NCBI RefSeq assembly: GCF_001194135.2 | Contig: NC_069001.1 | Span: 13,329,987 to 13,363,812, forward strand | Direction: 5' to 3' | Origin: Octopus bimaculoides | Taxonomy: Eukaryota | Length of the DNA: 33,826 nucleotides | In this document: piece by piece, positions 17,967 through 19,655 of the stretch | Position numbering within the stretch: the stretch's first letter is position 1 | Layout: every line of letters begins with the position of its first letter | Notes under the pieces: model-generated | Seen by the model: the letters and a program-made list of their open reading frames with translations, nothing else | Databases searched by the model: none | What the model was told of the DNA's origin: nothing | Position numbers and translations under genes: made by a program

Positions 17967-19272
17967 CTGAATGAACTTAATAAAAGCGTCTAAATGTGAA
18001 ACATCATAGAAACTGTTCAAACTGAAGTGCTTCTTGAGTGACACATTTTTCCATTCGAGTCAGTACAGAATTACAGATAGTATTTATGGAATTATGATTT
18101 ACTGTCGGGTAACTTTTGGCCAACCCAGTATATATGCCGTCAAAACATATGTAAGTCTATTTGAGGCTGTATCTATATTATATATAAATGTGAATTAAAG
18201 ATAACGCTAACACTACTTTGTCATAATCCTTCAGAAACTGCACCAGTATTATAGTAGGGTTGCAATTGTAATGGTTACTAATCGATGCAGTAGAAACGTG
18301 TAGGTCTACTTGAAGCTGAATATATATAAACAGGAATTAAAGGTAATGCTATGATACTTTGTAATAATCCTTATCATTATCATTATTATTATTAATATGT
18401 ATATATATATATAAAAGATAAATAAGAGTGAAAAAACTACAGAAGGCTTGTGTTACATGGTTAAAGTATATATTTAAATTATGTCAGGAAAATGTTATAA
18501 AATTTTTTGGTATATAAACATTGTATTTGGAGAAATAACCGGTTTCGTGTTGTCTTTTCAAATTTCTCTACTTCATCATAATATGTGTTCGCTCCCATGT
18601 GTAAAAAAGAGTTCTTATTTATCTTTTATACATCCAACCACGTGCTTTCACATACCAACTTTCTCACCTATATATATATATATATATATATATAAACAGT
18701 GGGATGGTACTAGTTGTAACATTTTGTCTCAGAATAAGCTTCTCAAAGAGACTTGTGCATTAGAAATACTTAGACGCATGGATTCAACTAGAACACAAGG
18801 GGATTGCCAGATATGTATGTGTTCCAGCTTGACTTTTTAGTCTCTTCAGTGATAAACATCAAGAATGTCCTGAGATAAGCCAAGAAACGCTTATTCCAAT
18901 ATAGAAATCAGTAAACGTATCTTACTGATCTATGCTAGTGATTCGAGCCAGGTAGGAAAACTAGACAGACAGCCAGCCAGATAGAGATATGGTTTGTCTA
19001 CATGATTTGGTATTATCCATGATAAATAGCGAGGACATTCTGAGTTCAGAAAAACACGTGTTCCGATATAGAAATTGGTTAATGAGACATTTACTGATCT
19101 GTGTGACAGCTATCCAGTTTAGAATTATTATATGTATTGAAATAGTCTTAGATTAAAATAATATTGAGTATACACATTTTTACTATATATATATATAGTA
19201 ACCAGTGAATGTATTTCACTGAAATAGTATATCCTTACGAGAGTGAAACAGACTTTTTCAACTAGCCAGTCA

Positions 19273-19331
19273 TGCTACTTCAGGCTGATGACGAGCAAAG
19301 ACTCAGAAACATGTCCCTGAATGCAGGCTAG
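19273..19331 (+). ncRNA. Type I hammerhead ribozyme motif with Schistosoma-like tertiary elements
   Basis: TTCAGG/CCTGAA stem I; UAC bulge; CTGATGA 19285-19291; GAG-CAAAGA-CTC; GAAA 19306-19309; palindrome ACATGT; GUC 19313-19315. Confidence 0.85.
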
Positions 19332-19655
19332 GCTGGGTGGAGGAGTTTGTCTCCCACTCGTAAGGATAAGGGCACAGGAAGTGTGTCAAGGCCTAATAGG
19401 AAGCGGTCCGGCTTCCTAGGGCTAAACAGCAGTAGTATATTCCCTTATTGGGACTGTCACGTTATGTTGGCAGTATACAACTACTTTATCGCATCACTAC
19501 TGCTTAAGTCTCTCTGAGAGATTTAGAAATGTATTATTTCTAATATATATATATGTCAATTCAAACATGAACAAACAAGAAAAAAACAACAACTCGAGGA
19601 CACAGAATAAGTACAGTGTTATTGGACGCTCAGGAAAGGAAAGAAAAGAAAGAGG

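What the first reader, a model, noticed from the sequence alone, without database searches (positions are those of the whole stretch)
19203..19543. Retrozyme-like, self-complementary segment of about 340 nt built around a hammerhead ribozyme
Seen: the HHR at 19273-19331 is nested inside a longer closing stem. A perfect 12-bp helix TATCCTTACGAG (19230-19241) / CTCGTAAGGATA (19357-19368) continues imperfectly inward, and CTAGCC/GGCTAG (19262-19267 / 19326-19331) extends stem I. The flanks are almost continuous hairpins: CAGTGAA/TTCACTG (19203-19221), TAGGAAGC/GCTTCCTA (19397-19418), a 9-bp AGCAGTAGT/ACTACTGCT helix (19428-19436 / 19496-19504) enclosing TCCC/GGGA and CTGTCA/TGGCAG, then two more hairpins to 19543. 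The segment is GC-richer than its surroundings, non-coding, and bounded by (TA)n. Established: animal non-LTR retrozymes are non-coding HHR-bearing monomers of a few hundred nt that give highly structured circular RNAs. Inference: this may be a genomic monomer of a cephalopod retrozyme family. I do not know of one described, but cannot check.
Basis: partly seen in the sequence, partly recalled or inferred. Interest (0 to 1): 0.9.

Follow-up and report, generated by a model that had tools for sequence, protein, structure and literature searches.

The report
Solo hammerhead-ribozyme repeat, retrozyme-like
This 340-base non-coding segment really does carry a hammerhead self-cleaving RNA motif of the usual animal type inside a heavily base-paired repeat, but here it is a single, probably weakened copy of a known kind of mobile element rather than something new.

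Summary
The + strand of 19203-19543 folds at -135 kcal/mol (z = -8.8 against shuffles). The segment is richer in G+C than its flanks, has no meaningful ORF, and lies between (TA)n runs.

The hammerhead has the canonical metazoan type I architecture:
- 6-bp helix I preceded by a UAC bulge
- CUGAUGA core
- helix II of 4 positions with a 6-nt loop
- GAAA
- helix III of 1 bp with the palindromic loop CAUG
- GUC|C cleavage site at 19315|19316

Two features weaken it. The normally conserved G10.1-C11.1 pair is a C.A mismatch, and Rfam gives only a sub-threshold match (HH9, 24 bits; gathering score 52).

A second, diverged copy without a recognisable ribozyme core lies at about 2689-2916 on the minus strand, so this is a dispersed repeat. 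There is no tandem array, and I found no reverse transcriptase in the larger ORFs within about 5 kb.

The most likely reading is a solo, probably inactive monomer of a retrozyme-like element that depends on Penelope-like elements. Genome-wide copy number, tandem master copies, circular RNA and the source organism could not be tested here. Comparable self-complementarity occurs in about 5% of this window.

The parts
19202..19543 (+). Whole element (copy A): non-coding, about 342 nt, 68% of bases paired in the MFE structure
   Evidence: MFE -135.1 kcal/mol, z = -8.8. Bounded by (TA)n on both sides.
19184..19197 (.). Left flanking (TA)7 microsatellite
   Evidence: (TA)n is the preferred target reported for some Penelope-like elements (Naiads; hypothesised for Neptune) (PMC8557442).
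19544..19554 (.). Right flanking (TA)5 microsatellite
19203..19221 (+). 5' hairpin CAGTGAA-TGTAT-TTCACTG
19230..19368 (+). Long imperfect hairpin arm with the ribozyme at its tip. It is closed by the perfect 12-bp helix 19230-41/19357-68 and a 13-bp helix 19248-60/19338-50 that contains several G.U pairs.
19262..19331 (+). Type I hammerhead domain including the extended helix I: CTAGCC/GGCTAG, TGC 19273-75/GCA 19323-25, and the UAC bulge 19276-78
   Evidence: (Rfam HH9 alignment 19265-19338, 24 bits)
19279..19284 (+). Helix I 5' strand UUCAGG. It pairs with CCUGAA 19316-19321 (6 bp).
19285..19291 (+). Conserved core C3-A9 (CUGAUGA)
19292..19305 (+). Helix II: C10.1.A11.1 mismatch, GAG/CUC (3 bp), 6-nt loop CAAAGA
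   Evidence: This deviates from the conserved G10.1-C11.1 pair (PMC4209133).
19306..19315 (+). G12-A14 (GAA), helix III A15.1[CAUG]U16.1 (1 bp plus a palindromic tetraloop), and C17. The predicted cleavage site lies between 19315 and 19316.
   Evidence: The ACAUGU self-duplex is -6.0 kcal/mol.
19371..19525 (+). 3' domain, a series of hairpins: 19371-87; 19390-19423 (with the 8-bp stem 19397-04/19411-18); the 9-bp helix 19428-36/19496-04 enclosing 19442-52 and 19453-74; and 19505-25
   Evidence: 25 of 26 comparable pairs are kept in copy B, 2 of them by compensatory double changes.
2689..2916 (-). Copy B: a diverged second member of the family. It is significantly homologous to A only over A 19336-19489, has no recognisable HHR core, is cut short at its 3' end by (TA)n, and is not unusually structured.
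   Evidence: 76% identity, E = 1e-13; z = +0.27; nhmmer E = 6.9e-15

Best explanation
Segment 19202-19543 is a solo genomic copy of a non-coding, non-autonomous retroelement of the kind that carries a type I hammerhead ribozyme. That kind comprises animal non-LTR retrozymes, their monomer derivatives, and the related terminal repeats of Penelope-like elements (PLEs).

Shown here:
- The + strand encodes a hammerhead with the canonical metazoan layout.
- The whole unit folds into a closed, multibranched, 68%-paired structure on that same strand.
- A second, diverged copy exists 16 kb away on the other strand.
- Both copies lie beside (TA)n.

Inferred from the described families:
- Master copies elsewhere, arranged in tandem, would be transcribed as multimers.
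- Two adjacent ribozymes would pair through the palindromic ACAUGU to form a 6-bp helix III and cut after GUC.
- The unit-length RNA, with 5'-OH and 2',3'-cyclic phosphate ends, would be circularised by the tRNA ligase RtcB.
- A PLE reverse transcriptase/GIY-YIG endonuclease would copy it into (TA)n targets.

This particular locus is most likely a dead-end insertion. It has only one ribozyme, so it cannot release a unit-length RNA. The ribozyme needs a partner to build helix III, and it has a C.A mismatch where G10.1-C11.1 is normally conserved.
For: HHR anatomy is read directly from the sequence and matches the published definition of canonical metazoan HHRs: helix I 6 bp, helix II 4 bp, helix III 1-2 bp with a 2-4 nt palindromic loop, active as dimers (PMC4209133; PMC7229834).

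Rfam HH9 aligns full length over 19265-19338. The UAC bulge, the 6-bp helix I and the 6-nt loop 2 are all in register.

My own relaxed type I descriptor finds this motif, against an expectation of 0.0067 hits per simulated window.

Folding: z = -8.8 on + and -6.1 on minus. The + strand is 28 kcal/mol more stable and has 13 G.U pairs, so the better-folding strand is the ribozyme strand.

Unit length 342 nt, G+C 43.6%, no ORF above 56 aa and no protein relatives. These fit the retrozyme description of 170-400 nt and G+C below 45%.

A second copy is present, with two compensatory pair changes in hairpin 19397-19418.

(TA)n flanks match the PLE target preference. Monomer derivatives of retrozymes are documented (Li et al. 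2026 preprint). Other PLE-style hammerhead motifs occur in the same window.
Against: - No tandem repeat at the locus.
- No RVT or GIY-YIG hit in ten ORFs within +-5 kb.
- Rfam score is far below gathering (24 against 52 bits), and nothing is found in larger scans.
- The C.A at 10.1/11.1 departs from a highly conserved pair.
- Copy B has no recognisable ribozyme, and its 5' half does not align significantly with A. The HHR is therefore seen in only one family member.
- Substitutions are not significantly depleted in paired positions (p = 0.25).
- Equally extreme folding z-scores occur in about 5% of 340-nt windows here.
- No copies could be retrieved from any public collection available to me. 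Copy number, tandem masters and RNA are unknown.
Confidence: 0.6

Rival explanations
1. It is a fragment of an autonomous Penelope-like element: a solo pseudo-LTR, or the terminal non-coding part of a truncated PLE. On this reading it is not a separate non-autonomous family.
For: Type I HHRs lie in PLE pseudo-LTRs. Retrozyme consensus sequences are sister to PLE pLTRs in Xenopus. (TA)n is a PLE target. PLE insertions form inverted or tandem structures that break short-read assemblies. Here an inverted HHR-like core lies 120 bp away (minus strand, 19686-19663), directly beside a 288-N gap.
Against: The motif is of the canonical class (helix I 6 bp, helix II 4 positions). It is not the min-HHR class reported for metazoan PLEs, which has a 7-8 bp helix II, a 4-5 bp helix I and an unpaired base after A9. 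No RT or EN ORF was found in ten ORFs within +-5 kb or seen by eye in the six-frame ORF lists. The unit is cleanly bounded by (TA)n at 342 nt. The neighbouring segment with the inverted core shares no sequence with it.
Confidence: 0.2
2. It is a SINE-like dispersed element of the Schistosoma Sm-alpha type (named from my own memory, not checked in any paper here), transcribed on its own. The 5'-proximal hammerhead would trim upstream sequence from the transcript, and no circular RNA stage would be involved.
For: Solo dispersed copies. The length is about 340 nt. The HHR lies in the 5' third of the unit.
Against: A T5 run at 19254-19258 on the + strand, upstream of the ribozyme, would terminate RNA polymerase III. 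There is no tRNA-like part (ARAGORN finds none; no Rfam tRNA, 5S or 7SL hit in the element). The apparent shared 5' end of copies A and B is not statistically supported.
Confidence: 0.1
3. The hammerhead resemblance is accidental. The segment would be just one of many self-complementary repeats or inverted duplications in a microsatellite-rich genome, with no ribozyme ancestry.
For: About 5% of 340-nt windows here fold as well or better. Rfam is below threshold. There is a C.A mismatch in helix II. Copy B lacks the core.
Against: All invariant core positions are present together with a 6-bp helix I, a correctly spaced helix II and loop, a palindromic helix III and a GUC site. The expected number of such hits is 0.0067 per window. 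The bare core pattern alone is expected 0.04 times. The UAC bulge and loop 2 align in register with Rfam HH9. The fold is strand-asymmetric in favour of the ribozyme strand, unlike a DNA palindrome.
Confidence: 0.05

Closest known systems
Animal non-LTR retrozymes (Cervera & de la Pena 2020, PMC7229834: coral, mussel, axolotl; Li et al. 2026 preprint)
   Same: Type I HHR. Non-coding unit of 170-400 nt (here 342). G+C below 45% (here 43.6%). Highly base-paired RNA. In the amphibian HHR_Amex1 type, helix III is 1 bp with a palindromic tetraloop, so the ribozyme acts as a dimer. HHR_Amex2 likewise has a mismatch at the base of helix II and cleaves weakly.
   Different: Retrozymes are defined as tandem repeats with an HHR in every unit. 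This locus is a single unit with no neighbouring repeat. RNA circles were not examined. The only other family member seen lacks the ribozyme.
Canonical metazoan type I hammerheads (Schistosoma/newt satellite class; Rfam Hammerhead_HH9 RF02275 and Hammerhead_1)
   Same: 6-bp helix I preceded by a UAC bulge. CUGAUGA core. Helix II of 4 positions with a 6-nt A-rich loop. GAAA. Short palindromic helix III. GUC site. The match to the HH9 model is full length.
   Different: C.A instead of G10.1-C11.1. Helix III is 5 nt shorter than in HH9. The score is 24 bits against a gathering score of 52. The comparison with the Schistosoma ribozyme sequence is from my own memory, not from a tool.
Hammerheads in pseudo-LTRs of Penelope-like elements (Cervera & de la Pena 2014, PMC4209133; Craig et al. 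2021, PMC8557442)
   Same: Type I polarity, palindromic 15.2-16.2, presumed dimeric action, association with (TA)n targets, and occurrence near assembly gaps and inverted copies.
   Different: Metazoan PLE min-HHRs have a long helix II (7-8 bp), a short helix I and an unpaired base after A9. Copy A has none of these, whereas two other motifs in the window (3334-3380 + and 19686-19663 minus) do. No RT/EN ORF is nearby.

Membership tests
Hammerhead ribozyme, type I (canonical metazoan class) | Invariant core C3 U4 G5 A6 N7 G8 A9 ... G12 A13 A14, A15.1-U16.1, H17, in type I order (helix I open) | tested here: met
   CUGAUGA 19285-91, GAAA 19306-09, U 19314, C17 19315
Hammerhead ribozyme, type I (canonical metazoan class) | Helix I of about 6 bp flanking the core and the cleavage site | tested here: met
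   UUCAGG 19279-84 / CCUGAA 19316-21, six Watson-Crick pairs
Hammerhead ribozyme, type I (canonical metazoan class) | Helix II of 4 bp with a conserved G10.1-C11.1 pair | tested here: not met
   C19292 opposite A19305 (C.A). Only GAG/CUC pair.
Hammerhead ribozyme, type I (canonical metazoan class) | Helix III of 1-2 bp capped by a 2-4 nt palindromic loop (dimer-acting) | tested here: met
   A[CAUG]U 19309-14. ACAUGU is self-complementary, duplex -6.0 kcal/mol.
Hammerhead ribozyme, type I (canonical metazoan class) | Loop 1 / loop 2 nucleotides for tertiary contacts | tested here: inconclusive
   The UAC bulge 19276-78 and loop CAAAGA align in register with the HH9 model. A contact cannot be shown from sequence.
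Hammerhead ribozyme, type I (canonical metazoan class) | Score at or above the Rfam gathering threshold | tested here: not met
   No hit at gathering or at E<=10 on 551 nt. HH9 scores 24.0 bits against 52 on 111 nt.
Hammerhead ribozyme, type I (canonical metazoan class) | Self-cleavage activity | not testable with these tools
   Needs in vitro transcription of monomer and dimer constructs.
Animal non-LTR retrozyme | Head-to-tail tandem repeats (two or more units), each with a type I HHR | tested here: not met
   TRF finds no long-period repeat in 18300-20700. blastn and nhmmer of A against the window find only A itself and copy B, 16 kb away on the other strand. The 288-N gap at 19754-20041 hides some sequence.
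Animal non-LTR retrozyme | Non-coding unit of about 170-400 nt with low G+C | tested here: met
   342 nt, G+C 0.436, longest ORF 56 aa, no protein relatives
Animal non-LTR retrozyme | Repeated family in the genome | tested here: inconclusive
   Two copies in 33.8 kb. The source genome was not available. Scans of public collections gave only chance 17-20-mers.
Animal non-LTR retrozyme | Expressed as linear and circular unit-length RNA | not testable with these tools
   No RNA data are available here.
Animal non-LTR retrozyme | Co-occurrence with autonomous PLEs | tested here: inconclusive
   PLE-style HHR motifs occur in the window, but no RT/EN was found. The literature reports abundant PLEs in octopus genomes, but the organism of this window is unverified.
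PLE pseudo-LTR | Adjacent RT + GIY-YIG ORF, or a direct repeat flanking one | tested here: not met
   No Pfam RVT or GIY-YIG hit in ten ORFs within +-5 kb. Nothing RT-like is visible in the ORF lists.
PLE pseudo-LTR | min-HHR architecture (long helix II, short helix I, unpaired base after A9) | tested here: not met
   Copy A has a 6-bp helix I, a helix II of 4 positions and no extra base after A9.

The most novel reading that the evidence does not exclude
Copy A is a recent offspring of an active retrozyme family that has not yet been described. Tandem master arrays of the family would yield abundant circular RNAs of about 340 nt, and it would be mobilised by PLEs into (TA)n microsatellites. 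Its ribozyme might also use a non-canonical 10.1-11.1 pair. A single CpG transition, CUCG to CUCA, would explain the present C.A and imply an ancestral C10.1-G11.1 pair.
Probability: 0.3. Interest if true: 0.5.

Novelty: new member of a known kind. Interest (0 to 1): 0.3.

Why it matters
If the family proves abundant and active, it would extend retrozyme-type ribozyme-bearing circular RNAs to another animal lineage. It would also give a concrete sequence for testing three things: dimer-dependent self-cleavage, circularisation by RtcB, and PLE-mediated insertion at (TA)n.

As it stands, the locus mainly shows that this genome carries several hammerhead-bearing repeats. That is expected wherever Penelope-like elements are common.

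Tried and rejected
**Looking for more copies outside the window**
- An exact-pattern scan with the 17-mer GGGCTAAAYAGCAGTAG, which is conserved between copies A and B, returned 27 metagenome loci, 4 viral loci and 12 prokaryote loci. blastn showed that none extends beyond 20 nt, so all are chance hits.
- I tried a pseudo-ORF approach. An exact look-up of the 56-aa ORF and of a neighbouring 119-aa ORF found nothing on record. A protein search with the 61-aa open frame gave no hit, and so did a search with all six frames concatenated.
- I tried to fetch same-species DNA through a LINE-tail ORF at 15144-15377. Its homologues are only 55-62% identical. The contig fetched (L044) shares nothing else with the window, so it comes from a different organism.

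**Rfam**
- The whole-window and 551-nt scans missed the motif. Only a 111-nt scan recovered HH9.

**Ideas dropped**
- Copies A and B sharing a fixed 5' end (CCAGTG...). The local alignment score of the 5' domains is 13, against a shuffle mean of 15.
- A decayed HHR in copy B. It is alignable by eye but not statistically.
- A MITE or terminal-inverted-repeat element. The two ends are not inverted repeats, and the fold is strand-asymmetric.
- A tRNA-derived SINE.
- A composite LTR-like element bounded by the 78%-identical direct repeats at 18671-18980 and 20111-20413. These look like two copies of an unrelated repeat, each preceded by its own (TA)n.

**Computational problems**
- The energy I obtained by forcing the minus strand into the mirror of the + strand structure is meaningless, because C.A pairs are not parameterised.
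- One constraint string had the wrong length.

Full report
**1. The observation**

I read 18900-19900 directly.
- the perfect 12-bp pair 19230-19241 / 19357-19368
- the 5' hairpin 19203-19221
- TAGGAAGC/GCTTCCTA at 19397-19404 / 19411-19418
- the 9-bp helix 19428-19436 / 19496-19504, with two nested hairpins
- two terminal hairpins

RNAfold reproduces them. The + strand folds at -135.1 kcal/mol, against -90.1 +/- 5.1 for dinucleotide shuffles (z = -8.8). The minus strand folds at -107.1 kcal/mol (z = -6.1).

The segment has 43.6% G+C, against 31-37% around it. It lies between (TA)7 at 19184-97 and (TA)5 at 19544-54. Its longest ORF is 56 aa with a TTG start.

**2. The ribozyme**

Reading the motif in standard hammerhead numbering gives the following layout.

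| Element | Sequence | Coordinates |
|---|---|---|
| Helix I | UUCAGG / CCUGAA (6 bp) | 19279-84 / 19316-21 |
| Core C3-A9 | CUGAUGA | 19285-91 |
| Helix II | C-GAG-[CAAAGA]-CUC-A | 19292-19305 |
| G12-A14 plus A15.1 | GAAA | 19306-09 |
| Helix III | A[CAUG]U | 19309-14 |
| C17 | C | 19315 |

The predicted cut is GUC|C between 19315 and 19316. Helix I continues outward past a UAC bulge (19276-78) through UGC/GCA and CUAGCC/GGCUAG into the long closing stem.

This matches the published description of canonical metazoan type I hammerheads. That description gives helix I as 6 bp, helix II as 4 bp, and helix III as 1-2 bp with a 2-4 nt palindromic loop, and says these ribozymes are active as dimers because helix III is too weak in a monomer (PMC4209133). 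The axolotl HHR_Amex1 is described the same way (PMC7229834).

Rfam gave no hit at gathering threshold on the window, and none at E<=10 on 551 nt. A scan of 111 nt gave a full-length alignment to Hammerhead_HH9 at 24.0 bits, E = 2.5e-4, against a gathering score of 52. The UAC bulge, the 6-bp helix I and loop 2 are in register, and helix III is shortened.

I wrote a relaxed type I descriptor after seeing the motif, so it is post hoc. It is expected to hit 0.0067 times per simulated window. The bare pattern CTGATGA-N6-30-GAAAC is expected 0.04 times. The motif is therefore not a chance match.

Its weak point is the base of helix II. C19292 lies opposite A19305, where G10.1-C11.1 is described as highly conserved. 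The axolotl HHR_Amex2 has a U.U mismatch at the same place and cleaves weakly: 22% in one hour as a monomer, better as a dimer. I therefore expect low or no activity for this copy.

**3. The surrounding structure**

In the MFE structure, 116 pairs close the whole unit into a multibranched fold. It consists of:
- a 5' hairpin
- a 10-bp stem joining 19221-30 to 19531-40
- the long ribozyme arm 19231-19367
- three further hairpin arms

13 of the 116 pairs are G.U, which would be C.A on the other strand. This accounts for the 28 kcal/mol advantage of the + strand. The strand that folds better is thus the strand that encodes the ribozyme, which argues for an RNA-level structure rather than a DNA palindrome.

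A circular fold of the unit is similar: -129.6 kcal/mol, 67% paired.

This degree of structure is not unique in the window. Across 122 gap-free 340-nt windows the median z is -1.2 and the 5th percentile is -9.5. Windows such as 24651-24990 (z about -20 to -28), 21251-21590 and 13941-14280 are more extreme.

**4. Relatives**

Within the window there is one other copy, B, on the minus strand. blastn gives 76% identity over 112 nt, E = 1e-13. nhmmer gives E = 6.9e-15, covering A 19336-19489 and window 2846-2689.

- B also lies beside (TA)n and is cut short at its 3' end by it.
- B is not unusually structured (z = +0.27).
- B has no recognisable hammerhead core. Its 5' half does not align with A better than shuffled sequence does.

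In the shared 3' domain, 25 of 26 comparable base pairs of A are also pairs in B. Two of them are kept through compensatory double changes: U-A to C-G at 19397/19418, and G-C to A-U at 19403/19412. When the 3' partner is slid by 1-3 columns, 14-20 pairs break. Substitutions are not significantly rarer in paired positions (p = 0.25). With only two sequences this is weak support.

No long-period tandem repeat exists around the locus.

**5. Attempts to reach other genomes**

All attempts failed.
- Pattern scans of metagenome, viral and prokaryote collections gave only chance matches.
- Look-ups and searches with pseudo-ORFs of the element gave nothing.
- A LINE-tail ORF from the window found only 55-62% identical proteins, on a contig from another organism.

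Genome-wide copy number, tandem master copies and the identity of the source organism therefore remain untested.

In the paper library I found no description of retrozymes or hammerheads in cephalopods. PLEs are reported as abundant and recently active in octopus genomes. Canonical HHRs are said to be present in all PLE clades except Naiads and most Chlamys.

**6. Context in the window**

The same descriptor found two further hammerhead-like motifs.
- 3334-3380 on the + strand has the PLE style. It has an unpaired A after A9, G10.1-C11.1, an 8-bp interrupted helix II, GAAAC-GCG-UC and a 6-bp helix I. It lies in one arm of a 175-nt inverted repeat. The other arm carries the same motif with CCGAUGA, next to an assembly gap.
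- 23140-23174 has a 5-bp helix II (GAACC/GGUUC), loop CAAUAA and a UUA|A site. Rfam reports nothing there at E<=1.

A fourth core lies on the minus strand at 19686-19663, 120 bp from copy A and pointing towards it. It has the unpaired A, GAGC/GCUC and the palindrome ACGU, but G at position 17, which cannot be cleaved. That segment is not structured (z = +0.7) and abuts the gap at 19754-20041. None of these contexts shares sequence with copy A.

Ten ORFs within +-5 kb have no RVT or GIY-YIG match.

**7. Interpretation**

The most economical reading is a solo monomer of a hammerhead-bearing, non-autonomous retroelement of the retrozyme / PLE-dependent kind, inserted in a (TA)n microsatellite. 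Such monomer derivatives are documented for vertebrate retrozyme families and are regarded as non-transposing offspring.

The mechanism is taken from the described families, not shown here: multimeric transcription, dimeric self-cleavage, RtcB ligation, then PLE-mediated reverse transcription and insertion.

Rival readings:
- A fragment of a PLE terminal repeat.
- An Sm-alpha-like SINE. A T5 run at 19254-58 and the absence of any tRNA-like part argue against RNA polymerase III transcription.
- A chance motif in a palindromic repeat. This is unlikely, given the descriptor statistics and the strand asymmetry.

**8. Verdict**

I do not file the locus as a retrozyme, because the defining tandem arrangement was tested here and not met. 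It works like, and most probably derives from, that kind of element.

Novelty: at most a new member of a known kind. Interest is modest.

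Noticed in passing
window 3223-3397 (motif 3334-3380 +; mirror copy 3286-3240 minus): A 175-nt inverted repeat (91% identical arms) in which each arm carries a PLE-style hammerhead: unpaired A after A9, G10.1-C11.1, interrupted 8-bp helix II, GAAAC-GCG-UC, 6-bp helix I. 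The minus-strand arm has CCGAUGA (U4 to C). The repeat abuts the gap 3400-3859. Rfam reports only generic miRNA-hairpin matches there.
   Followed up: partly
window 19660-19686, minus strand: Hammerhead-like core CUGAUGA-A-GAGC-UCC-GCUC-GAAAC-GU with the PLE-type unpaired A and the ACGU palindrome, but G at position 17 (not cleavable). It lies 120 bp from the finding, points towards it, and sits next to the gap 19754-20041. The surrounding 197 nt are unstructured (z = +0.7).
   Followed up: partly
window 23136-23178, + strand: A third hammerhead-like motif: GCCU-CUGAUGA-GAACC-CAAUAA-GGUUC-GAAA-AUCAAUU-A|AGGU, preceded by GUAC. It has a canonical G10.1-C11.1 pair and a 4-bp helix I. There is no Rfam hit at E<=1, and its 221-nt context is single-copy in the window.
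   Followed up: partly
window 18671-18980 and 20111-20413: Two direct copies (78% identity over 311 nt) of another repeat, each starting right after a (TA)n run. They bracket the finding at a distance of 1.44 kb. 18985-19075 is a further partial duplicate of 20248-20342.
   Followed up: partly
window 24651-24990 (also 21251-21590 and 13941-14280): 340-nt windows with far stronger self-complementarity than the finding (z down to -20/-28, symmetric on both strands). These are probably inverted-repeat elements. 3063-3143 is 76% similar to both arms of the first one.
   Followed up: no
window 1-155, 16622-16808, 23717-23911, 24969-25147, and other places: A SINE-like repeat of about 155-190 nt in many copies and both orientations (73-92% identity). 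One Rfam tRNA match at 9676-9748 on the minus strand (31.8 bits) is not confirmed by ARAGORN.
   Followed up: partly
window 15144-15377, + strand: A 78-aa open frame (…KYKDLKKEIQKMWHIKARTVTVIVSVLG…) that is 55-62% identical to short ORFs in ENA assemblies. In the one contig fetched (for P0001) the ORF lies directly downstream of RVT_1 ORFs, so it is probably the tail of a non-LTR retrotransposon ORF. It has no Pfam hit of its own.
   Followed up: partly
whole window: There are 18 runs of N (10-968 nt), many of them beside (TA)n or (CA)n microsatellites or repeats. Two of the hammerhead-bearing segments end at such gaps, as expected for tandem or inverted insertions that short-read assemblies cannot resolve.
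   Followed up: no
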